Assembly (NCBI RefSeq): GCF_002113885.1
Contig: NW_018407733.1
Span: 709,018 to 773,017 of the forward strand
Reading direction: 5' to 3'
Origin: Mizuhopecten yessoensis
Taxonomy: Eukaryota
Length of the DNA stretch: 64,000 bases
The notes beneath the pieces were generated by a model that worked only from the letters and a program-made list of their open reading frames with translations, did no database searches and had not been told where the DNA came from. A program made the position numbers and the translations under genes. This document shows positions 7,901 to 33,060 of this stretch, one piece after another. The stretch's first letter is position 1. Each line of letters opens with the position of its first letter.

Positions 7901-10900
7901 ACAAGTTTTACCGCTTAGTGACCACAAATATACATCACTCCAACAGGTACAGCCTATAAGTACAGTCCATTCATATACTCTTAAATTATCAAATGAAACT
8001 TTCGCTGTGTACTATTTACTTTTGCTGCTTGTGCAGCTGCAGTGGAAAGACAAATACAGTAAAACCTTAATAAAATGCCCGTCTTTTTATTTACTAAATT
8101 GTACCTTGCTTTTAACCACCAAAATACATCAATGTCCCATTTTCTTTTTCTTATTAATTCCTTCGCATGTACAGCACATTTTTTTACATAAATGGGGATT
8201 GGCCCATTTGTTCTCAAATTGGGAATAAAACGACCCTTTGGGTAGGAATTTTAAGGAGTAAACTGAAAATTATGGGAATAAGGCAAAAATACAGAACAAT
8301 TTCAATTGGGAATTGGGCCCACTATCAGCCCCAAAAAGCCCTCAGAAAACATCCTGATGTATTCCTCAATATACAATGTATCACCAAACCCCTGGATAAT
8401 GCCAAAATTTTGCTGGAAAAGCTGGAGTGTACAACTAGTTGGACATCTGGATCTAGTACATTGTAGGGTTTTTTTTACGCCAGGATTAGTAAAAATGATC
8501 AGAATCTACTTAAAAAAACATAGGTCGGCTGATAAAATGTTGCATTCTGCATACAGGGGAGTACAAGGTAGTTAAATCTTGAGAAGTCAAAATGTGGTCA
8601 AGTAATGCAGGTGATCTCTTAATTATTAGGTTCATTTCATTATGAAAACAATTCATTTATTAACCATGAAAGTGATCTTTTAACACAGTGGTCTCTTAAA
8701 GGAGGTGGTTGCATAAGTAGGTTTTACAGTACTCTTAAAACATGAAACTGTACAAATGAATCAAACATATCAGTTGATGATAGTTAGATGTATAAATTGT
8801 CCGTAATTACTCACCCTGACGTTCCACTGGCCCAGTCTGTCGCGCGACAGGGAATTTCTTGCCATGTTATAAAGTCTGCGCCGTTTCTGCAGTTCCTGTA
8901 GCCAGTACATCATCGAGTGCCTGTCAGAGGCATCCAGGAGGTGCTCCTTCCCTCCAGACCTGATTTACATATAATGTTGTTTGTTAGGCGATTTCATAAT
9001 GTAAATAAAATCATATGTAGGACTTTTGGTGCAAATCTTCAATTCTGTGTATCTATGGAGATTAAATAGAGATTTTTCTTGATAAAGTTACACAAGTCAT
9101 AAGTCAACAATTTCTAATCCATGAAAATTTAGGTAAAAATGAACTTAAAAGTAATTTTGTCTCAACTTCGTAAAGTTTCAAGTAGTGAAGTGCAGGTAGA
9201 TTTGTGACCTTGACCTTTTACAACAAATGTGATGTTGATAAAATTTTAAATATAGAAAACTAAGAAAAGAACAAACAAGAGCCTCCCATAGTAAGCATTG
9301 TATGCCCACAAACGCCATGTTTTGGTGAAAGGGAAAGATATGTCACTGGCAACTGAAGGATACTGTGTTCATTTTATTGTAAATAATTCTGATGTTAAAA
9401 AACAAAGTTTTTTACAGGAATTTCTGGGGTTATGTGTTTTCCTTTTTTAGTTGTTAATGTCTGTTTTGTTTTAATAAAGTACAAAGTGTCACGTGTAAAA
9501 GCCTTCTAGTGCATTCTTTTAAGAAAGCATATATACAATGTACGATATGTAAAAAGAGGAAACTTAATATCATTTATTACTCTGGAAAGTTTGATTATAT
9601 TTTGGACATAAAACATACTAAACTTCACTTATCATCAAGGAATCAGGCAATTTCTTCTTAAATATTTGTTATATGGATTGCCTCCCTTTGCATTTTTTTT
9701 TTAAATGATCATAAGGTTCAAACTTGCAGGGAAAGGAATAAGAAATGCAAGGCCTATCATAAAATTTAACAAAGCAATTTATTTTTACAATATGCAAATC
9801 TGAATATGATTCTCATCATATGCATCTTCCTCAAAACATCTGGTTAGAAAGTTTGGGCTAGTTGACAGATGGGCAGCACAATATCATAACACCCTCTGGT
9901 TTTTTAGGTGTATATCAATTGAGTATTGTATACCATACCCTACTTTGGAGGACGAGAGGATCAGTGACATTTAGTTGTATTATAAATCGCAATCGGATCA
10001 GTATTTTTCTTCCTCGGGAGTCAATTTTAATATGAAGAAAATGTTTAATTAAACCATGTATGAACTTTTCTAGAATATTGTCTTCCTTCAGTCAGTAATA
10101 TTATGAATTGTTTTATTTAAAATTTCGTTTTTGTCATATTGTTAGTAACATCTTCCTGCAGTTAAAGATAGATGCTGTATATCTGGGGGATCAAAGCATT
10201 GTTATACACACCACCTGTTATAGGCACATTTTAATGTGAGATATTTAAACAAGAAAGCTAGCAATTACATCAATGTTTTGTACCCAGCGGATTTACAAAC
10301 AAACAAGGAAGTATACACACATCATCAGATCATTGCCGGGGGTTTTAGTCACACATAAACAGATTGATTTCATCAGGATTTACATTTTAATGTTTTCTTC
10401 CCTTTAGCCTTTTTGATTTGACTGGCTAACCAAGGTTTATGGGATCATGCTATTCATCCTTTCTATTCACAAACTTTTTGTATTGAATTGCACCACTTGG
10501 TTAATGCTGATGTTCAAATCACCATATGTCTTACAGTCCCATGTGGGCCGGGTTGACAAAACATTGTGTCTCCAGACATGAGGTGCTCCCATGACAATAT
10601 TTTTCAAATTTTGGGAGTGTGATTGTTTCAGTTATCACCAGGGCCAGCAGTCACATTCCCCTCAGCCTTCACCATTAGGGAGTGTGATTGCTTCAGTAAT
10701 CACCAGGACCAGTAGTCACATTCCCCTCAGCCTTCACCATTAGGGAGTGTGATTGCTTCAGTTATCACCAGGGCCAGCAGTCACATTCCCCTCAGCCTTC
10801 ACCATTAGGGAGTGTGATTGCTTCAGGTATCACCAGGGCCAGCAGTCACATTCCCCTCAGCCTTCACCATTAGGGAGTGTGATTGTTTCAGGTATCACCA

Positions 10901-20138: not shown

Positions 20139-20239
20139 TCACATGACCGGATATTACGCTATCGCCTAGCAACACTGGTAGTTCAGCGACAGCTCTTGAC
20201 AGCATTTGGCGAACTTTTCCAAGCGGGAGATTATAAATA
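20139..20239 (+). promoter_or_regulatory. Putative promoter of the modular orphan gene: TCACATGA, RFX X-box-like ATCGCCTAGCAAC (20161-20173), TATAAATA (20232-20239)
   Basis: Motifs lie just upstream of a GTGAGT donor at ~20313. Motif match only. Confidence 0.35.
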
Positions 20240-21169
20240 CAAAGAGTGGTTTCACAAGTGAAAAAAGATTTTTAGATAGTAAAAGGTGTTCCAGAACAAT
20301 TATACGAGATTTGTGAGTATTCGAATATGTCGTTTTGATTGTTGAATTAGTAATTATAGGAGAAATAGTCTGACATTATGTGTAACGTTCTGAAAACGTT
20401 TTTTTTTGTTCCTGTGTTTTTTTCATGGATTTTATTGAGATAAAGTCTCAAATTACGTCAATATATCTTCGAAATATTTTAATTTAAATAGATCGACCAA
20501 GACACATTCCATTGCAATTTCCACGTTACATAGATGCAAAAGACATCAAGAGAGAAATAGAAGAGATACGGCAACGCATTGAAAGCAATACTGTGAGTAT
20601 AAAGCTACTAGAAATTTGTAATAATTTGAGATATTTGTGATGTTAACAAGTTAATAATGTAAGTTTTAAGCTGAATAGCCTTGCTAACATGCTTGTGTAA
20701 TACAGTTGAAACTCAATATAACTTTCACACTTATCGCCACTATATGTTAATTCAAAGTCAAAACCTTTTAGATAAAAGACACAGTATATCTTATCGTTAA
20801 TTCATAGTTTAGTTTAAACATATTTTATTGTACAAATATACAAATGGATTGGACAACAAGTTAATACAACTTAATAGAGTCCTCTCCTCAATACATATTG
20901 TAAAAATAGTGTATATGTTTTTGGGGAAAGGGAAAAAGATAGGGTGGAGAAGGAAAGGTGGGGTGGGAGGGGGCGGAGGTGATGGAGGGGAGGGGTGTCA
21001 CCTAGAAAAGTAAACGTGTACACTATAAAATCGATCCGCATTTGAATAAATTATAAATTATACATCCTGGTAGAGTAATTTCAAAATGAACAGAATCAAT
21101 GTAACAAAGAAATCAGGCAAAATAATGAAATGCAATTTCATAAACACATAACAATTTACACATAAATAG

Positions 21170-22260: not shown

Positions 22261-25200
22261 ATGATGAATATGGACATACAGACAAATGTCATAGCAGAAA
22301 TTGATCGATTGAGACAAGACAACATGGATATGGCTGCAATATTAGACCGGGAGGAAATATTTTATGGACACACAAACATTTATGAAGAAGTAACCAGACT
22401 CCGATGTATGAATTTGAGACTTAAGGCTACCATGGACCTACAACAAATAGACGATATCGGCAAACGGCACAACAGGCCATGTATTCGTGCCAGAACTACA
22501 CAAGCAGATTCTACATACAATGGATCTAACAAGCAAGAGATCAGCCGATTGAGCACTGGAATTTCAAATCACGGAGAACGAGATCGTTCGACACTCTGCG
22601 CAACAGACGACGACGCTTCCTCCGAGGATAGAGACTCCAACATGAATTCCGTAAGAGAATCTCCCTCGGAGACAGAGGAAATGTTGTTCATCGTGCACCC
22701 TACAAGGAGTCCATCCGGAACCGTGGTCACTTACGATCTACCTGAGGATGTGACCGGAATGGACTTGTATGGCTGTCTAGACAAGAGGAACATACGTGTC
22801 CACGTGGAGCCCATACGGCAATTATATGAAGAGGACATTCCTCATTATCGCAATATTTTAATTGAGGATGTCGAAATACGAGGTCAGTATATATAGGGGC
22901 CTCCCCTGTTTTATGCTTTAATTTCGGACTTGATTAAGGCTACTTCTACCGAAGCGTAGAGGGAAAGGGCGATTCATAGCGAAATGAAAAGCAGAGAAAA
23001 TATATGGTAACATTGCAAATAGTGGATTGTGACTCCCTTATTACACGATATGTATGTCTCATTTGTACATATAATGATGTGTAGTATGTAACATTTTCAG
23101 AAATCTATTCGTCAAAAAGCTCGGATATGACAACTGGGAATCCTATAAAAGAGCACGAGTCATCGTTAGCAGTGACAGACATCCCAACAGACGGGGACAA
23201 CCATCTGGACATCCCCTTCATGGGAGTCTCTGACCAGGAGGGACAGGGTGATGTATCCAAGCTGGATCCGAGAGGCTTGGTATCTGACTCAGATGTCACA
23301 CGGATTAACCAGAACCAAGAACAAGATCTGGTGGCCATTGTCGAACAACAGAGATATGCTGATTACATAGAGTCTTGCAAAACAACCATACACCTGTGTA
23401 GTGTCGTCATAGAGATGTGCGCCAACAAAATAGGCATTCCGGGGCAAGGTAAAGTTTAATAGATTAGTTGATGCACGTTTTTATATTGTAAATAGTGATG
23501 CATAGCCACATTGTATCTGTTAATACACGCGCGAGAAGATCCATGCGAACAACAGCACTTTCTTCCTATTGCAGATTTCCTGACCAAAAACGTTTCCAAC
23601 ATGGATGGCCCTGAGCATTCAAAGCCAGTACCAGAAAAGGGAAGCAATGTCAATTTCAGCGAAAACGAAACTTTAGGTTCGCATAAACAGATATCGTATA
23701 CAGGTAAGTCGATGAATTGTGCTTTTATTTAGAGAGTTTACCAATACCAAAATTGTGTGTCATTCAAAAAATATGAAACAAAAAATGTTTTAAAGTTAAT
23801 CGAATATTGAACTGTATAATATATCACAATAAAATTGTTTTAACAGCTTTAATAATTATTGGATAATGTAATTATTCCCTACCACAGATGTCCAGATCCC
23901 TAAAAACATCGTGTCTCATGAGAATGAGCCAGTGGAGTCGAGTTCCCTGGAGGTGACGGACATAATAGAGGATGCCATAGGGAACAGACACTTACCCATC
24001 CCCTTTAAAGTCATACCATACGGCCACCGGAGGCCAAAGTGTGTCCCTAAACTGGACCTGACAGGATTGGCGTCCGAGTCTGATATTGACGTCGCCAAGA
24101 TATCTGGCTATGACATATCATGGCTATTTCCTGGTCCTAACACTGGCAACGACGCAAGTGTGATGTCACATAAACGGTCATCTCACCATCATGGTAAATT
24201 AGTTTTAACTGTAGTAGGAATTAACAGTGAAATATTATTTAAAAACATGAAAAATTCACATTTGTTAAAATGATAATATTGGTTTTCATGGTTTTTTTAA
24301 ATTCTTTATTGAGAGGGAAAGGATAAAATTTTAAAGCGAAAAGAAAATGAAGAAAATATCAAGCACTAGTGCCTTGTAACTTATTGCATGATCTTTTACT
24401 TTTCATTTTAACCAAATAATAATGTGGTATTAATTTTTTTTACAGAGATTTATTCTTCAAAAATTTCGGGTATGAAAACTGTGAGTCCTACAAAGGAACA
24501 TGAGTCATCATTAGCTATGACAGACATACCAAAAGACGATGAAAGCCATCTGGACCTCCCCTTCAAGCTGGCTTCCTCTTCTGACCAGGAAAGACCGAAT
24601 GGTGTATCGAAGTTAGACCTGAGAGGCCTGGTATCCGACTCCGACATTAACATCGCACGGGTTGACGAGAATACGGAACCAGAATTAGTGGCCAACGTCG
24701 AAGAGCAGAGATATGCTGATTACATAGAGTCTTGCAAAACAACCATACACCTGTGTAGTGTTGTCATAGAGATGTGCGCCAACAAAATAGGCATTCCGGG
24801 GCAAGGTAAATGTAAAGAGTACTTGAAGTATGATTTTAACATGTTATAAAATGTCAACACTCCGATTCACACAAATGTACAGTTTTTAATTACAGGTAAA
24901 AAGATACTCACAAAACAATAACCATTGCTTCCCTTTGCAGATTCCTGGACCCAAAATGTTTCCAATATTGACCATCCAGAGCGTTCCTCGCATGTAGAAG
25001 AAGAAAGAAAGGATTTCGGTATGAGCGATAACTATACCTTAGGTTATCGAGGACTGGTATTATACACAGGAAAATCAAGAACATTTTAAGAATGATTTTT
25101 TAGCGAAATTCTCCTGTTATTTTTAATATCAAAATTGAGTGGCTTTAAAATATTAAAAAGGACTGTTTTAAATATTTGCGAAAATTGTCTGTATCGTATA

Positions 25201-28200
25201 CCCTACCAAAATTATTTTTCAGGAAATGCCTGAAAAGTTATTGAACTACAGAATATTCCTTTATACAGATGCTATGAGCCCTAAAAAAGTCGTGTCTCAT
25301 GGTAATGAGCCAGTGGAGTCGAGTTCCCTGGAGGTGACGGACATCATAGAGGATGTCATAGGGAACAGGCACTTACCCATCCCCTTTAAAGTCATACCAT
25401 ACGACCACCGGAGGCCAAAGTGTGTCCCTAAACTGGACCTGACAGGATTGGCGTCCGAGTCTGATATTGACGTCGCCAAGATATCTGGCTATGACATATC
25501 ATGGCTATTTCCTGGTCCTAACACTGGCAACGACGCAAGTGTGATGTCACATAAACGGTCATCTCAGCATCATGGTAAATTAGTTTTAATTAAAAGTAGA
25601 ATTCAATATTAAGAATTTACTTAAACATGTATCATTTAGATAATCATGTATAAATGTCGAGGTTTAATTAATAACACATTTGCTTAAGTGGTTATGTTGG
25701 TTTTCAGGTCCACTCATACCTATAGAGAGGGGCCGCATTTAAGTCCTATAAAAGAACACATCTTAAGAATAGGTTGTTTGTACATGTAACAATTGCATTA
25801 TTATACGAAATATGTTTTTCAATTTCCACACGATCAATTATGTGTTCTGTATCACATATTCAGAGATCTTTCAGTCAAGAGGATCGGATATGTCAGCTGA
25901 GAATCCTATAGGAGAACGTGATTCATCATTAGCTAACACAAACTTCCCAAAAGACAAGGGCAGCAATCTGAACATCCCCTTCAAGAGAGTTTCCTCTTCT
26001 GACCAGGATAGACCGAACGGCGTTTCAAAGTTACAGCAGGACAGGCCGGATCCTGTATTCAATCTAGATCCGAGAGGCATGGTATCCGACTTCGACATTA
26101 ACATTGGCCGGTTTGACAAGAACACTGAACCAGAATTAGTGGCCGACGTCGAAGCACAGAGATATGCCGATTATATAGAATATTGTAAAGCTACCATACA
26201 CCTGTGTAGTGTCATCATAGAGAAATGCGCCGACAAAATTGGCAATTCTTGGCAAGGTAAATTTAGATTAGTTGAGATATGTTTTTAATTTTTAAAACGT
26301 CAAACTTTCGATTCACTTAAAATACAACGTTCTTATATACATGAAAGAGTATCCGTATGAATAACAATCAATGTCAAAAAGGTTATTTGTAGAAATGTAT
26401 AATCTTCACCATCAATTTACAGTGGCTCAGGTCCCTAAAGAAGTCGTGTCTCATGGTAATGAGCTAGTGGAGTCACATTCCCTGGAGGTGACGGACATCA
26501 TAGAGGACGTCATAGGGAACAGACACTTACCCATCCCATTTAAAGTCGTACCATACGGCCACCGGAGGCCAAAGTGTGTCCCCAAACTGGACCTGACAGG
26601 ATTGGCGTCCGAGTCTGATATTGACGTCGCCAAAATATCTGGCTATGACATATCATGGCTATTTCCTGATCCTAACACTGGCAACGACGCCACTGGGAAG
26701 CAGCATAAACGTAAACCATGTAAGCTTACTCCCTTCTGAAACTTATTTGAGTCGACCTAACAACTGGTTAGGATTTTATAATGATATAATTGGCTAACAA
26801 CAAGTTTCATGTCTTTTTGAATGTTATTCACTCTTTAAATGTTTAAACTAAAATAGCGCATGTAGGAATATGAGGCATAGTATCAGGTATGGAATCCGGG
26901 TATAACAATGTAAAAATGTTCAACAAGTGTTCGTCAATAGCGTTGCTATCGAACTTGTCATGAACAACCTGCGACAGTTTTGTTTTAAATATCGGGTACT
27001 GACTCATAGAGATCCTGATATTGTTTGTGATCATCCTTGCCATCCTTTCCGAAATAAAAACATAGTTTGGATGTAGATGAGCATTATGCAACACAAACAT
27101 ACACATTAAACCCAGTATCACATAAAACGTTTTGAAATTGTCTATTAACATCTGAAAAACGCATAATTACACATAGAATATCAAATATCCTTAAGCAATG
27201 TAGAATAAAAATCTGATGTATGATGTATTGATAATACATGTATGATGATATACAAAATTCATTGCGTTTTCAGCAGATTTGAAGAATTCCTCTATCAAAA
27301 TAAATAGTGCTAACAAGGAAAGGAACAGGTATATGACATCACCAAACAAAGGAAATATAAAGCGTGCCCGTGTCCACTTTAGGGACGTAGACAGCGTGAT
27401 ATCCGACCATTACCTTGATGACCGGGACGATGTCCCCTGTATAGATCTGAGTCAGGAAGTCTCTAGTATCCGACCGGTCAAGGAAGGACATATTGTAAAA
27501 GGTAGCATTATCTTCATTTACAAAAGAATAATTATGTGCATAAATCCTTATATTATTTTTCTGCTCGTTTATCACCAATTCCATATCAAGCCTACCCTGA
27601 TATATGTATCAAGACTTTGTTATGACATAAAGTTACTGACAAATAGTGTATTATTACCAGATTTTACTGCATGAACAAAAAACGTATTGAAGTAATTGAT
27701 TATCTTTTACATTTTCAGTAATCATAATTATGATAACGTGGTTATGCTATTATTTGATTAAACCATATTTCATTTTTGACTTTTAAACTAATAAAATGAC
27801 AATAAATATAGCTCTTTTTTTACTTGAACAATATTAAACTTAAATACTTGCAACACACACATTTGATTTCAGAATTTCTAAGCTCTGACGACGAATCCCC
27901 ACGGGACACAACTCTGGATTGCGCCCCAGAATTGCCTTACGCAGGACTCGAAAAAGAAGATTTGATGAACGACTTACCTCGGGGATCAAAGTTGGAAGAA
28001 TCTGAATTTGTTGACGATGATGTAGGACATTTGAACCTTAACATGTCGGCAATTACCATACCTGGCCACGGTCACCAAACCAGAAAAAATCCTTACAAAA
28101 AGGAGATTTGTTTTCAAGGTAATGGTTTTATCTTTACATAACTAACGAACTATCTAGCTAAACTCGACTACTTGCATCTCAGGATAGGTTTTCTTTCCTT

Positions 28201-28649
28201 TCCTCAACTTTTGTGAAACTGTTGAAGGTATTGTTATTTCTTTATAATACGGGTATACTCGTAACATATTTTACGTGTCAACGCATGAATATGGTTTCAA
28301 TTAATATTACTTGTATCATTACTTGAAATTCATTGCATTACTATGTCAAAACAACATCTCAATACATTTAAGTTACTTTATTATATGTCGGTTTACATCA
28401 CCGTGATGAATTACTAGAAAGTTTACCGCCCTCATATGATCCTGGCTGTTGCGAGGACGCTAAACCCCAAACAAACAAAAAATAGTATATTAAATTACAC
28501 AATGTCTTCTATTAAAAAAATTATGAATACAATTATTATTTGAACATTTTATATTAACAATATCAAATGAATTCTCTCTTCTTTCAGACAGGACATGGTA
28601 CCAAATTTACAGGGATCCTGGTGATGTTAACGTCAAATCGAGATATTAG
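22261..28649 (+). CDS. Uncharacterised ~1,120-1,140 aa protein built from triplicated exon modules (acidic, probably disordered)
   Basis: Exons: 22261-22882, A1 23101-23448, B1 23575-23703, C1 23888-24193, A2 24446-24805, B2 24941-25018 (or 25069), C2 25269-25574, A3 25864-26256, C3 26423-26719, D 27274/27277-27501, E 27873-28118, F 28588-28649 (TAG). All internal exons are phase 1-1 and open. AATAAA at 28785-28790. Upstream exons at ~20260-20312 and ~20492-20592 are 5'UTR or an N-terminal extension. No family recognised. Confidence 0.75.
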
Positions 28650-29984
28650 CCTCACCATGCCATCCTGGAAAGGACACGTCGTTGATGCATCCGTGACTTC
28701 TGTCATAATTCTATCGCTGTTCGATTCAAATATAGATTCCTTAATATATGGATATGAAAATATGACCGGAATGACTTTGTTTGCAATAAATGTACGCTTA
28801 TCAATAGTGTTTTTGCATTTTCATTTTTATCATCACACTTCAGGTTACTGATACTGAGGAGATTTTGAGAGATAGGCTTGACACAATTAATGATTACAAA
28901 TGCTGCTGTTATTGAGCGTTTTCATACGTTATTAGAACTAACATTTACATCCTCCCACTAAAATAGGGAAGTTGTAGATGGAATTTACGAAAGTCTGCAT
29001 TCGATAAACGGATTGAAAGCTATTGCAATGAACCTAATCGGAAAATACAACACGATAGTAACCGGTACCAAAGTGTTAACACAACCATTCTTCGAACTCA
29101 AAATTTACCATAAAACTAGGGGAGAATGTGGAGAAAGAAAATATTTATACGGAAACCTTTAAAAAGGTACAAGGAGAATAAGACCATGGGTTACGGAAGG
29201 GTAAGCGTCTTCTGTTTCATCGGCGACACCCGCCTTGTCCATCTTAAAAAGTCCTATAATCACAAACATTTGAGCCTGTTTGAGTAAACAGTGAGACCAA
29301 CCTGAATGCCTTTTTTATAATCGTGAAATTTGCAATAATGAACTGATTCATTGCCAGGATCGTAGAGTCTGACAATACCGCTATATCTAAATAGATACAC
29401 AACCCGAATAGCAATGATTGTTTTCATTATTGTCATTAACTTTTGCATCAGGTATATGTGGAAAAGCTGAATTAATACGAACTTGGAAGACTACAAATAA
29501 AGATAAGAGACGCTCTGCGTGAATCAAAGGATGACACAATTGGTTCGCGTGGTTAATTTTTAGAACAATAAACAGTTCAACAGCGGTTCAACGATTAATT
29601 TCATATATATCGAACCACATGTATCAATAACGTATAACTCGACTAGGTTAAAGCATACAAATCTCTCGACCGAAAACCAATATTATCAAAATGAAATGCT
29701 CAAGAAAACAAAGAACAACGGGGTTTATTTGTGAAGCAAAGTCAGTTTCTGTTATGCTGTAGGAATACCAATCTCTAGACAATTACGATATTTGAAAGTA
29801 TCATCAATATACCAAAGGAATTGAATAGGCATTATGTATTATAAATGCATTGTACGCATAAAATGAGTTTTAATTTATAAGAAATCAGAAAAGAAATGTG
29901 TGTTTTCAAATATAAACTTGATTTATTTCATAACAATTATGAACAATTTAATACAACTTACATAAATCACTCTTGCCGGCCATA

Positions 29985-31364: not shown

Positions 31365-33060
31365 TAATAGTTTTCCTGTATGTTAGGGTCATAAGGTGAT
31401 ATTTTTCAGGTTTCCAGGAGGCAGTAAGGTGACAGTTCCTGTATATTAGGGTCATAAGGTGATATTTTTCCTGTATATCAGGGTCATAATGTGATATTTT
31501 TTTCAGGTTTCAAGGAGGCAGTAAGGTGACAGTTCCTGTATACTTCAGGCAGTAATTTTCCCTGTATACTGGTGGCAGTTTCACTGTATACTGTTGACAG
31601 TAGGGTGACCAATTTATTGTATACTGGCGACAGTAAGGTGACAGTTCTACTGTATACTGGCGACAGTAAGGTGACAGTTCTACTGTATACTGGCAACAGT
31701 AAGGTTACAGGTTTACTGTATACTGGCGACAGTAAGGTGACAGTTCTTCTGTATACTGGCAACAGTAAGGTTACAGGTTTACTGTATACTGGCAACAGTA
31801 AGGTTACAGTTCTACTGTATACTGGCAACCGTAAGGTTACAGGTTTACTGTATACTGACGACAGTAAGGTGACTGGTTTACTGTATACTGGCGACAGTAA
31901 GGTGACAGTTCTACTGTATACTGGCAACAGTAAGGTTACATGTTTACTGTATACATGCGATAGTAAGGTTACAGGTTTACTGTATACATGCGATAGTAAG
32001 GTGACAGTTTTACTGTACATTGTATAATGGCGACTTTAAGATGATGGTTTTGCCGTATAATGACGACAGGAAGGTTGCAGTTTTACTACAAATACCGACG
32101 ACAGTAAAGTGATAGTTTTTATGTAAGGTGACAGACAGTTTCAGTAATGTTACATGTTAACTGTATAATGACAACAGTAAGGTTGCAGTTTAACTGTATA
32201 GTAGCGACAGTAAGGTGACAGTTTTACTGTTTCTCCTACTTCTAAATGGTACTGACCAACTTCAACAATTTGAAGATAAAATTTCAGACGAGGAGTGAAA
32301 CATGGAAAGAGATTGTTTTTAAAAGATACGAGATGGTCTAATTTGTGTTTGAAAAGTGACGGTAGAGGGCTGATTTGAAAAATTCCGTTGTGGGGCTCGA
32401 ATTAATGTCAGGTGGGAGTTTATTCCACTCGGGTATAGTTCGAGGGGAAAATTATGCCTTTCTGGTCTGGGTTTTTGAGTGGGGAATTTGATACGAAAAC
32501 TGGTGGTTTGTTCGGGATTTTCTAACTGTAGGGATCAATCTGTCTGATTTAACGATAGCGACTTTCTGGTTTACAATGTTATGAAGCAAGGTCAGACGAG
32601 CATCTCTACGTCTATCCGCTAGAGGGCGCAGCTTTAGGTGGTGCAACATTTCTGAAACACTGGAGGTACGATGGTTGTACCTGTGCCCACTGAGCACATA
32701 GCTCGCTGCCCCTCGCTGGACCATCTCCAACTTGTCAACACCTGTTACTATACAGGCGCCAGTAACGTTGCAGTTGTACTGTATACAGGCGACAGTAAGG
32801 TTACAGGTTTACTGTATACATGCGCCAGTAAGATTAAAGTTTTCCTGTATATTCTGGCCTAAATAAGGTGACAGCTTTCCTGTATATTCTGGCGACAGAA
32901 AGGTGACAATTTTACTGTAAACTGACGACAGTAAGGTGACAGTTTTACAGTATACAGGCGACAGTAAGGTTAAAGGTTTACTGTAAACAGGCGCCAGTAA
33001 GGTGACAGTTTTTCTATATTTTTGTGACAATAATATGATAGTTTTCCTGCATACTTAACA
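31365..33060. repeat. 33-bp minisatellite (CTGTATACTGGCGACAGTAAGGTGACAGTTCTA) interrupted by a ~500-bp insert
   Basis: Tandem units at 31575-32230 and 32745-33050, with degenerate flanks. Confidence 0.9.
32440..32735 (-). mobile_element. LINE reverse-transcriptase ORF C-terminal remnant inside the 33-bp minisatellite
   Basis: ORF 32452-32730 EMVQRGAASYV...TSSVSEMLHHLKLRPLADRRRDARLTLLHNI matches the common VQRRAARFV..SSVT.ML..L....L..RR...RL motif of non-LTR elements. Confidence 0.75.

What the first reader, a model, noticed from the sequence alone, without database searches (positions are those of the whole stretch)
22261..28649. Orphan gene assembled from triplicated symmetric exon modules (A-B-C)x3, where A and C are themselves ancient paralogues
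Seen: exon order A1 B1 C1 A2 B2 C2 A3 (B lost) C3. Every exon is phase 1-1 and a multiple of 3, so any subset can be skipped in frame. A and C share a core, ESS-L-VTDI--D---HL-IPF---V-KLD--GL-S-SD, so the protein has six copies of one module. Weaker echoes occur in exons D (VPCIDLS) and E (VGHLNLN). Inference: two nested rounds of tandem exon duplication created an undescribed repeat family that could vary by combinatorial splicing.
Basis: partly seen in the sequence, partly recalled or inferred. Interest (0 to 1): 0.7.

Follow-up and report, generated by a model that had tools for sequence, protein, structure and literature searches.

The report
Scallop gene with triplicated exon block
This is a real, transcribed Yesso scallop gene (RefSeq LOC110456632, "uncharacterized") whose middle grew by repeated tandem duplication of a block of in-frame exons; it belongs to a small protein family seen only in scallops, is predicted to be mostly disordered, and is a tidy but ordinary case of gene growth by exon duplication.

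Summary
On the + strand, 22261-28649 carries 12 coding exons in the order E0, A1 B1 C1, A2 B2 C2, A3 C3, D, E, F. All ten internal exons are phase 1-1 and multiples of three. A and C share a 55-aa core (BLASTP E 4e-12).

The exon chain equals RefSeq XP_021363144.1 (Mizuhopecten yessoensis LOC110456632, 1124 aa). Spliced transcript contigs from two studies show every junction except C1-A2.

The gene is not a strict orphan. The genome has at least three paralogues, and a module profile searched against 1.84 billion proteins found only scallop proteins, from four genera. The Argopecten orthologue (523 aa) has a single A-C unit, so the expansion is probably lineage-specific.

A-type and C-type modules both occur, adjacent and without B, in an old paralogue. 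The A/C split is therefore ancient, and B was more likely gained than lost.

C exons and the A tail are 95-97% identical between units while the introns are about 60%. That points to exon-limited gene conversion.

The shared core is predicted disordered; only a Cys-heptad helix in each A exon and an N-terminal helical hairpin are predicted structured. No module-skipping transcript was seen. The D/E "echoes" are not significant. Function is unknown; a multivalent scaffold is my inference.

The parts
20493..20593 (+). Probable upstream (5') exon, AG..GT bounded and in frame with E0. It encodes HIPLQFPRYIDAKDIKREIEEIRQRIESNT but has no in-frame ATG.
   Evidence: tblastn of the Argopecten orthologue P0018 gives 77% identity over 31 aa. 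Sequence read. The X1/X2 transcript contigs extend 224 nt upstream of the ATG at 22261 (table 8). Whether those 224 nt include this exon was not tested.
22261..22882 (+). Exon E0. It holds the start codon, a conserved N-terminal helical hairpin (aa 2-69) and a conserved ML.IV.P.RS.SG.VV.YD beta-hairpin motif.
   Evidence: Junction 22882>23101 seen in X1 and X2. Paralogous first exons found. Secondary structure from the AF2 model.
23101..23448 (+). Exon A1 (348 nt, phase 1-1): shared core plus a C-x6-C-x6-C helix tail.
23575..23703 (+). Exon B1 (129 nt, phase 1-1), weakly constrained.
   Evidence: Junctions A>B1 and B1>C1.
23888..24193 (+). Exon C1 (306 nt, phase 1-1).
   Evidence: Junction 23703>23888. 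The C1>A2 junction is not listed but is in the RefSeq model.
24446..24805 (+). Exon A2 (360 nt). Its last 106 nt differ from A1 at 3 positions.
   Evidence: Junction 24805>24941.
24941..25018 (+). Exon B2 (78 nt). It uses a GTATGA donor upstream of the position homologous to the B1 donor.
   Evidence: Junction 25018>25269 in X1 and X2..
25269..25574 (+). Exon C2 (306 nt), 95% identical to C1.
   Evidence: Junction 25574>25864.
25864..26256 (+). Exon A3 (393 nt), with an 11-aa insert (LQQDRPDPVFN) that may be an old microduplication.
   Evidence: Junction 26256>26423.
26423..26719 (+). Exon C3 (297 nt).
   Evidence: Junction 26719>27274.
27274..27501 (+). Exon D (228 nt; NAGNAG alternative acceptor at 27277). 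It has a basic patch and the motif DDRDDVPCIDLSQE, which fits the loose SUMO-interacting-motif pattern and recurs in the paralogues.
   Evidence: Motif definition from PMC12751080.
27873..28118 (+). Exon E (246 nt).
28588..28649 (+). Last coding exon F, with the stop codon at 28647-28649.

Best explanation
This is LOC110456632 of the Yesso scallop. It is a transcribed gene whose exons appear to be spliced constitutively, and it encodes a 1124-aa acidic protein predicted to be mostly disordered. It belongs to a gene family seen only in scallops (Pectinidae).

Shown:
- The central 3.6 kb consists of three tandem units, A-B-C, A-B-C and A-C, made of phase 1-1 exons.
- A and C are old paralogues of one roughly 60-aa segment. 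It carries two short conserved motifs: HL.IPFK, and RP..VPKLDL.GL.S.SDIDVA.I.
- A additionally carries a 30-aa helix with Cys at three successive heptad positions.

Inferred history:
- An ancestral A-C pair was already present before the scallop paralogues split.
- The pair was duplicated inside this gene.
- An exon B arose in one copy, and that A-B-C unit was duplicated again.
- The C exons and the A tail were then kept near-identical by gene conversion confined to the exons, while the introns drifted apart.

Inferred function (weak): a multivalent scaffold. The N-terminal helical hairpin would mediate self-association. The repeated disordered motifs and Cys-helices would raise the number of binding sites for a still unknown partner. 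All units are included in the mRNAs seen, so the duplication changes valency rather than providing a splicing choice.

The confidence given applies to the anatomy and history. For the scaffold function alone I would give about 0.3.
For: Gene model, phases and identity with RefSeq.

Transcription and GT..AG junctions in two studies.

A/C homology.

Family restricted to four scallop genera among 1.84 billion proteins. Paralogues in the same genome.

Orthologue in Argopecten: the first 60 aa are 92% identical, it is 523 aa long and it has one A-like and one C-like exon.

Module tree. The paralogue is built almost wholly of phase-1 introns, with an A-type exon directly followed by a C-type exon.

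U1 and U2 align through their introns; U3 aligns only in the exons.

Identity between U1 and U2: C exon 95%, A 3' part 97%, introns 58-67%, B 64%. The contrast is significant (Fisher p = 3e-29 and 1e-7). dS between C copies is 0.06-0.15.

AF2: the core has no secondary structure (pLDDT 47-62); the tail helix has pLDDT 80-96. The full-length model has mean pLDDT 36.5, with only the N-terminal hairpin, one beta-hairpin and the three tail helices.

C-x6-C-x6-C occurs three times.
Against: - The function is not tested in any way.
- Low pLDDT from a 7- to 10-sequence alignment is weak evidence of disorder.
- The C1>A2 junction was not displayed by the transcript contigs.
Unannotated extra units there, or secondary loss, cannot be excluded.
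- No Pecten or Ylistrum orthologue of this particular clade was found, so the expansion is dated by one outgroup only.
- dN/dS between C copies is 0.5-0.8 on very few changes, which is compatible with relaxed constraint.
- Two raw RNA runs of the species had no reads on the gene, so expression is restricted or conditional.
Confidence: 0.75

Rival explanations
1. A generator of combinatorial isoforms. Because every unit exon is phase 1-1, the cell skips different subsets of A, B and C exons and so makes proteins with different module numbers.
For: All internal exons are symmetric 1-1. RefSeq isoforms of two family members skip whole symmetric exons: LOC110447630 X3 lacks aa 572-633, and Argopecten XP_069113098 lacks a D-like exon. 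One contig joint runs 23448>24941.
Against: That joint has a 25-nt anchor inside the stretch where A1 and A2 differ at only 3 of 106 positions, so it fits the normal A2>B2 junction equally well. All other joints in two studies are the consecutive ones. RefSeq gives only a NAGNAG variant for this gene. Contigs drop rare variants, so low-level skipping is not excluded.
Confidence: 0.1
2. The high exon identity is due to purifying selection alone, on protein and splicing signals, after one old triplication. No gene conversion is involved.
For: The conserved stretches end close to the exon borders: identity falls within about 15-17 nt of each C exon edge.
Against: Synonymous divergence between C copies is only 0.06-0.15, while the flanking introns of the same units have 33-41% mismatches. 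A1 and A2 differ at 24% of the positions in their 5' part but at 3 of 106 in the tail. Protein-level selection does not hold synonymous sites.
Confidence: 0.12
3. A neutral, recent expansion in a fast-evolving disordered protein. The extra units add nothing functional and are tolerated.
For: dN/dS between C copies is 0.5-0.8. B exons are no more conserved than introns, and B2 has shifted its donor. The Argopecten orthologue works with one unit and lacks the tail helix. One transcript contig in X1 carries a frameshifting +C in the A2 tail.
Against: All nine unit exons keep open frames, phases and splice sites although the introns are near saturation. The two core motifs and the Cys heptad are kept in every copy and in the paralogues.
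Confidence: 0.2
4. An assembly artefact: a single A-B-C unit wrongly expanded in the draft assembly.
For: The assembly is fragmented (82,659 contigs) and the units contain near-identical stretches.
Against: The units differ clearly: A 5' parts are 76% identical, B 64%, introns about 60%, and A3 has an insert and no B. Unit-specific junctions B2>C2, C2>A3 and A3>C3 are present in transcript contigs at 99% identity or more in two studies. DNA runs of other samples hold 80-94% of the words.
Confidence: 0.02

Closest known systems
Tandem exon duplication of symmetric (phase 1-1) exons, the classic route of gene growth in animals (general knowledge of exon duplication and shuffling; not checked against a paper here)
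   Same: Adjacent homologous exons share the same phase at both ends, so reading frames are preserved. Whole blocks are duplicated with their introns.
   Different: The duplicated exons here encode disordered motif-bearing segments rather than folded extracellular domains. They are all included in the mRNA rather than used in a mutually exclusive way. Exon sequences are homogenised while the introns are not.
Concerted evolution of intragenic repeats by gene conversion
   Same: Repeat copies within one gene are far more alike at synonymous sites than their flanks. Identity drops sharply at tract borders.
   Different: The tracts coincide with single exons (C, and the 3' third of A). They affect only part of each unit. 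A 5' parts and B escape.
M. yessoensis LOC110447630 and its Pecten, Ylistrum and Argopecten orthologues; KP79_PYT14178 and its orthologues (all 'uncharacterized' in RefSeq)
   Same: They share the N-terminal helical motif (52-56% identity over 64 aa), the ML.IV.P.RS.SG motif, core modules, the A-type tail, the C-type module, D-like CIDLS exons and phase-1 introns throughout.
   Different: They carry one A-type and one C-type module, not three. The middle Cys of the tail heptad is Thr or Ala. They are longer, with other repeated exons.
Pfam PF06227 Poxvirus Bcl-2-like
   Same: Three weak matches (about 13 bits each) of the A-tail helix to positions 94-136 of the 156-position model. Their sum, 28.8 bits, exceeds the sequence cut-off of 23.6.
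   Different: No single stretch passes. Only one helix of a multi-helix fold is matched. The paralogues give no hit. I regard it as a summed chance match.
SUMO-interacting motifs (as defined in PMC12751080)
   Same: Exon D has a Cys/Ile/Leu core (CIDL) flanked by acidic and Ser residues, in a disordered context. It is conserved in the orthologue (VHCIDLSQE) and repeated in the paralogues.
   Different: The A/C modules, which are the subject of the finding, do not fit the pattern: 3 sites in the whole protein against 10 expected in shuffles. The motif is loose and no binding was tested.

Membership tests
Tandemly duplicated symmetric exons | Neighbouring exons are homologous to each other | tested here: met
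   Direct repeats in three copies. HMM E-values 1e-41 to 1e-61 for the six modules. A against C, E 4e-12.
Tandemly duplicated symmetric exons | Same intron phase on both sides, and length a multiple of three | tested here: met
   All ten internal exons are phase 1-1. Confirmed by RefSeq identity and by junctions.
Tandemly duplicated symmetric exons | Alternative (mutually exclusive or cassette) use of the duplicates | tested here: not met
   Only consecutive junctions in the contigs of two studies; the single skip-like joint is ambiguous. Contigs can miss rare forms.
Orphan / taxonomically restricted gene | No detectable homologue outside a narrow lineage | tested here: met
   The profile search of 1.84 billion proteins gave 10 hits. 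Nine are from Pectinidae and one is an unrelated low-complexity repeat protein. No Pfam or PDB match.
Orphan / taxonomically restricted gene | Single gene without paralogues (strict orphan) | tested here: not met
   At least three further loci in the same genome share the first exon and/or the modules.
Concerted evolution by gene conversion | Copies more alike at silent sites than in the flanking non-coding DNA of the same duplication | tested here: met
   dS 0.06-0.15 in C exons. Exons 95-97% identical against introns 58-67%. Fisher p = 3e-29.
Concerted evolution by gene conversion | Copies group by species rather than by position across species | not testable with these tools
Pfam PF06227 Poxv_Bcl-2-like | A domain-level match covering the fold | tested here: not met
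   Zero stretches pass on their own. Only profile positions 94-136 of 156 are matched. AF2 gives a single helix.
SUMO-interacting motif arrays | Four-residue core with at least three V/I/L(/C) residues next to an acidic or phosphorylatable stretch | tested here: not met
   For the A/C modules the regex finds none. Only exon D (VPCIDLSQE) and one site in E0 fit: 3 sites in the protein against 10.0 +/- 3.3 in shuffles. Definition from PMC12751080.
SUMO-interacting motif arrays | Binding to SUMO | not testable with these tools
   Needs a binding assay.

The most novel reading that the evidence does not exclude
The three A-exon tails each form a roughly 30-residue amphipathic helix with Cys at three successive heptad 'a' positions (C-x6-C-x6-C, nine Cys in register). 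Together they might pack into an intramolecular three-helix bundle with three stacked tri-cysteine layers, a redox- or metal-binding site of the kind known so far mainly from designed coiled coils. Unit number three would then be under selection, in an animal noted for accumulating cadmium. Nothing here tests the packing or any metal binding. The paralogues have Thr or Ala at the middle position and a single helix.
Probability: 0.05. Interest if true: 0.6.

Novelty: new member of a known kind. Interest (0 to 1): 0.3.

Why it matters
The locus shows several stages of gene growth in one place:
- an old two-module pair;
- a probable birth of a new exon (B);
- block duplication;
- exon-limited homogenisation.

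This happens in a gene family confined to scallops, for which no function, domain or paper exists. It could serve as a teaching or test case for how disordered, motif-bearing proteins gain valency. It also adds an unnamed family, with a conserved N-terminal helical hairpin and the motifs HL.IPFK and VPKLDL.GL.S.SDIDVA, to the list of lineage-restricted mollusc genes. It does not change any general view of exon duplication.

Tried and rejected
- Pfam on each exon and on seven family proteins: only the summed weak PF06227 match. Rejected as a chance sum.
- Word-index protein search with exon A3, with RefSeq P0011 and with the Argopecten orthologue P0018: nothing beyond the queries' own clusters. 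The length window limits these searches.
- PDB sequence search with the protein and with the module profile: nothing.
- ESM Atlas on the N-terminus and on paralogue P0013: best scores 0.82-0.87, which is chance level. The named hits are generic coiled-coil plus disordered proteins.
- Paper searches for the locus and accession names: none.
- SIM hypothesis for the A/C modules: rejected by a pattern count against shuffles.
- D/E 'echoes' of the module: not significant.
- B remnant in the A3-C3 intron: inconclusive.
- P0010 (Logan, 287 aa), a hit of the profile search: a repeat protein with GKVDKVSGKELVSTSDITQI units, judged unrelated.
- Raw RNA runs X16 and X21: no reads on the gene, so they gave no splice counts.
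- I did not send a self-joined spliced model to any search tool. Exons were searched by reference. The full-length searches used the public RefSeq protein that the profile search returned, after I checked exon by exon that it equals the window's exons.


Full report
**What is there**

The window is part of contig C4406 of a 988-Mb, 82,659-contig assembly. RefSeq names returned later identify it as the Yesso scallop, Mizuhopecten yessoensis.

Reading the + strand between 22261 and 28649 gives twelve coding exons, each bounded by AG and GT:
- E0 22261-22882
- A1 23101-23448, B1 23575-23703, C1 23888-24193
- A2 24446-24805, B2 24941-25018, C2 25269-25574
- A3 25864-26256, C3 26423-26719
- D 27274-27501, E 27873-28118, F 28588-28649

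All ten internal exons are multiples of three and start and end in phase 1. The direct-repeat search finds the A and C exons as three-copy families. The exon translations occur in this order, each separated by one split-codon residue, in RefSeq XP_021363144.1, 'uncharacterized protein LOC110456632 isoform X1', 1124 aa.

**Is it expressed and spliced that way?**

Eight small contig sets of the species hold 40-50% of the sampled words of the 6.4-kb stretch, which is about the exon share. I laid two of them, from different studies, on 22720-28719.

They give GT..AG joints at E0>A1, A>B1, B1>C1, A2>B2, B2>C2, C2>A3, A3>C3, C3>D, D>E and E>F, at 99% identity or more. The B2>C2 joint uses the 25018 donor, which makes B2 78 nt.

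The C1>A2 joint is not listed, although a contig starting at A2 has 25 further letters upstream.

One joint, 23448>24941, looks like a skip of B1-C1-A2. Its anchor is 25 nt, inside the last 106 nt of the A exon, where A1 and A2 differ at three positions. It is therefore equally the normal A2>B2 junction.

Two raw RNA-seq runs of the species gave no reads. That suggests restricted expression, but the tool itself warns it is no test without a positive control. No transcript evidence for module skipping was obtained.

**The module**

A2 and C1 align over 55 residues at 47% identity, E 4e-12. A exons carry an extra tail, RYADYIESCKTTIHLCSVVIEMCANKIG.

An HMM of the modules gives no significant match to exon E (E 2.6) and none to exon D, so the 'echoes' are not supported.

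AlphaFold2 on exon A2, with a ten-sequence module alignment, predicts no secondary structure for the shared core (pLDDT 47-62) and one confident helix for the tail (residues 84-114, pLDDT 80-96).

The full-length protein, with a seven-sequence family alignment, has mean pLDDT 36.5. Its only predicted elements are:
- an N-terminal helical hairpin (2-31, 40-69);
- a small beta-hairpin (146-159);
- the three tail helices.

The 'module' is thus best described as a disordered segment with two short conserved motifs (HL.IPFK and RP..VPKLDL.GL.S.SDIDVA.I), not as a folded repeat. The alignments are shallow, so this is a moderate inference. Each tail has Cys at three positions seven apart.

**Relatives**

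Pfam gives nothing for any exon. The whole protein sums three 13-bit matches of the tail helix to one helix of PF06227 (28.8 bits, no single stretch passing), which I reject. PDB sequences give nothing.

Searching the scallop's own genome finds:
- the module at two other loci, C76750 and C1767;
- the first exon at those loci and at a fourth place.

Word-index searches had left the protein open and the claim was 'orphan', so I spent the one exhaustive search on a profile of ten modules. Among 1.84 billion representatives only ten proteins score E <= 0.001. Nine are uncharacterized proteins of M. yessoensis, Pecten maximus, Argopecten irradians and Ylistrum balloti. The tenth is an unrelated repeat protein.

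The family is therefore scallop-restricted as far as this library shows, but the gene is not a lone orphan.

The nearest relative outside the species is Argopecten XP_069126520 (523 aa). Its residues 36-95 are 92% identical to the first 60 residues here. It continues with one A-like exon without a tail, one C-like exon, and D- and E-like parts. No orthologue of this clade turned up for Pecten or Ylistrum.

**History**

In a tree of 18 modules, the three A copies group with the A-type module of paralogue LOC110447630 and its Pecten orthologue (support 88/90). The three C copies group with the paralogue's C-type module and the Argopecten C (80/83). In that paralogue the A-type exon is directly followed by the C-type exon, and nearly every intron is phase 1. 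So the A/C split predates the paralogues, which themselves predate the four genera.

Within this gene, units 1 and 2 align through their introns (1151 nt at 77%). Unit 3 aligns with them only in the A and C exons and a few dozen flanking bases.

Neither outgroup has an exon between A and C, B1 and B2 are no more alike than the introns (64%), and B2 has moved its donor. The more parsimonious order is therefore:
1. A-C is duplicated.
2. B is gained in one copy.
3. That A-B-C unit is duplicated again.

This replaces the idea of a triplication followed by loss of B3.

**Concerted evolution**

Between units 1 and 2, identity by segment is as follows:

| Segment | Identity |
|---|---|
| C exon | 95% |
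| Last 106 nt of A | 97% |
| First 242 nt of A | 76% |
| B | 64% |
| The three introns | 58-67% |

The contrasts are highly significant (p = 3e-29 and 1e-7). Synonymous divergence between C copies is 0.06-0.15, far below the intron divergence of the same duplication. Identity decays within about 15 nt of the C exon borders.

Protein-level selection cannot explain the silent-site identity. Exon-limited gene conversion is the best explanation.

**How it probably works**

Shown:
- a mostly low-complexity, acidic protein (191 D+E against 127 K+R);
- no recognisable domain;
- a strongly conserved N-terminal helical hairpin;
- three helix tails and six copies of a motif-bearing segment, all of which are included in the mRNAs seen.

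Inferred: a scaffold whose number of binding motifs was raised by duplication. The partner is unknown.

I tested one concrete idea, that the hydrophobic/acidic motifs are SUMO-interacting motifs as defined in PMC12751080. The A/C modules do not fit, with 3 sites in the protein against 10 expected. Only exon D's DDRDDVPCIDLSQE does. It is conserved in Argopecten and repeated in the paralogues.

The Cys heptads in three helices invite the idea of a three-helix, thiol-lined bundle. That idea is untested.

**Verdict**

The nested-duplication reading is supported and refined. 'Orphan' holds only at family level. Combinatorial splicing is unsupported.

This is a new, tidy member of a well-known kind (tandem duplication of symmetric exons with concerted evolution) in an undescribed scallop-specific family. 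Interest is modest.

Full-length searches used the public RefSeq protein returned.

Noticed in passing
window 20493-20593 (+), and 20190-20312 as a possible first exon: An AG..GT-bounded exon upstream of the annotated start encodes 31 aa that are 77% identical to the N-terminal extension of the Argopecten orthologue and is in frame with E0. It has no in-frame ATG: Argopecten MHIPL reads RHIPL here, and with the exon 1 that I guessed a stop lies upstream. The scallop may have lost an older start codon, or another first exon exists. Transcript contigs extend 224 nt upstream of the ATG.
   Followed up: partly
window 24742 (exon A2 tail): The X1 transcript contig carries an extra C after 24742 at full depth (92.7 of 92.7), which would shift the frame. 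X2 does not (0 of 111.5). The site lies in the stretch shared by A1 and A2, so it may be an allele, a contig artefact or a real frameshift variant.
   Followed up: no
window 27274/27277: NAGNAG acceptor of exon D. RefSeq isoforms X1 and X2 differ by it (SD against Y). The transcript contigs show the 27274 form.
   Followed up: yes
window 24989-25297 and 28132-28472: Low-depth (4-7) colinear contigs cross the B2-C2 and E-F introns in both RNA sets. They are probably unspliced precursor or retained introns.
   Followed up: no
L016 (G000:C1767:815500-825499), L017 (G000:C76750:1775000-1784999): The paralogues LOC110447630 and KP79_PYT14178 are built almost wholly of phase-1 introns. They contain their own repeated exon pairs (SARSDVSCIDLS... 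followed by EFL...), and in KP79_PYT14178 there are many SDSESDDISCLDLDEES repeats. RefSeq isoforms of LOC110447630 skip a whole symmetric exon (aa 572-633).
   Followed up: partly
L018 (G000:C76750:1847500-1857499), minus strand, about 9143-9394: A fourth E0-like first exon (439-aa open frame, same N-terminal motif and ML.IV.P.RS.SG motif), with no A/C module within the 9 kb downstream that were fetched.
   Followed up: no
window 31484-32027: A minisatellite of about 33-nt units, open in both strands (VYSKPVTLLSP-like repeats), in the intergenic region downstream of the gene.
   Followed up: no
window 25998-26069 (exon A3): The 11-aa insert LQQDRPDPVFN follows the similar DQDRPNGVSKL. At DNA level the two 33-nt halves match at 19 of 33 positions, so it is possibly an old in-exon microduplication.
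   Followed up: partly
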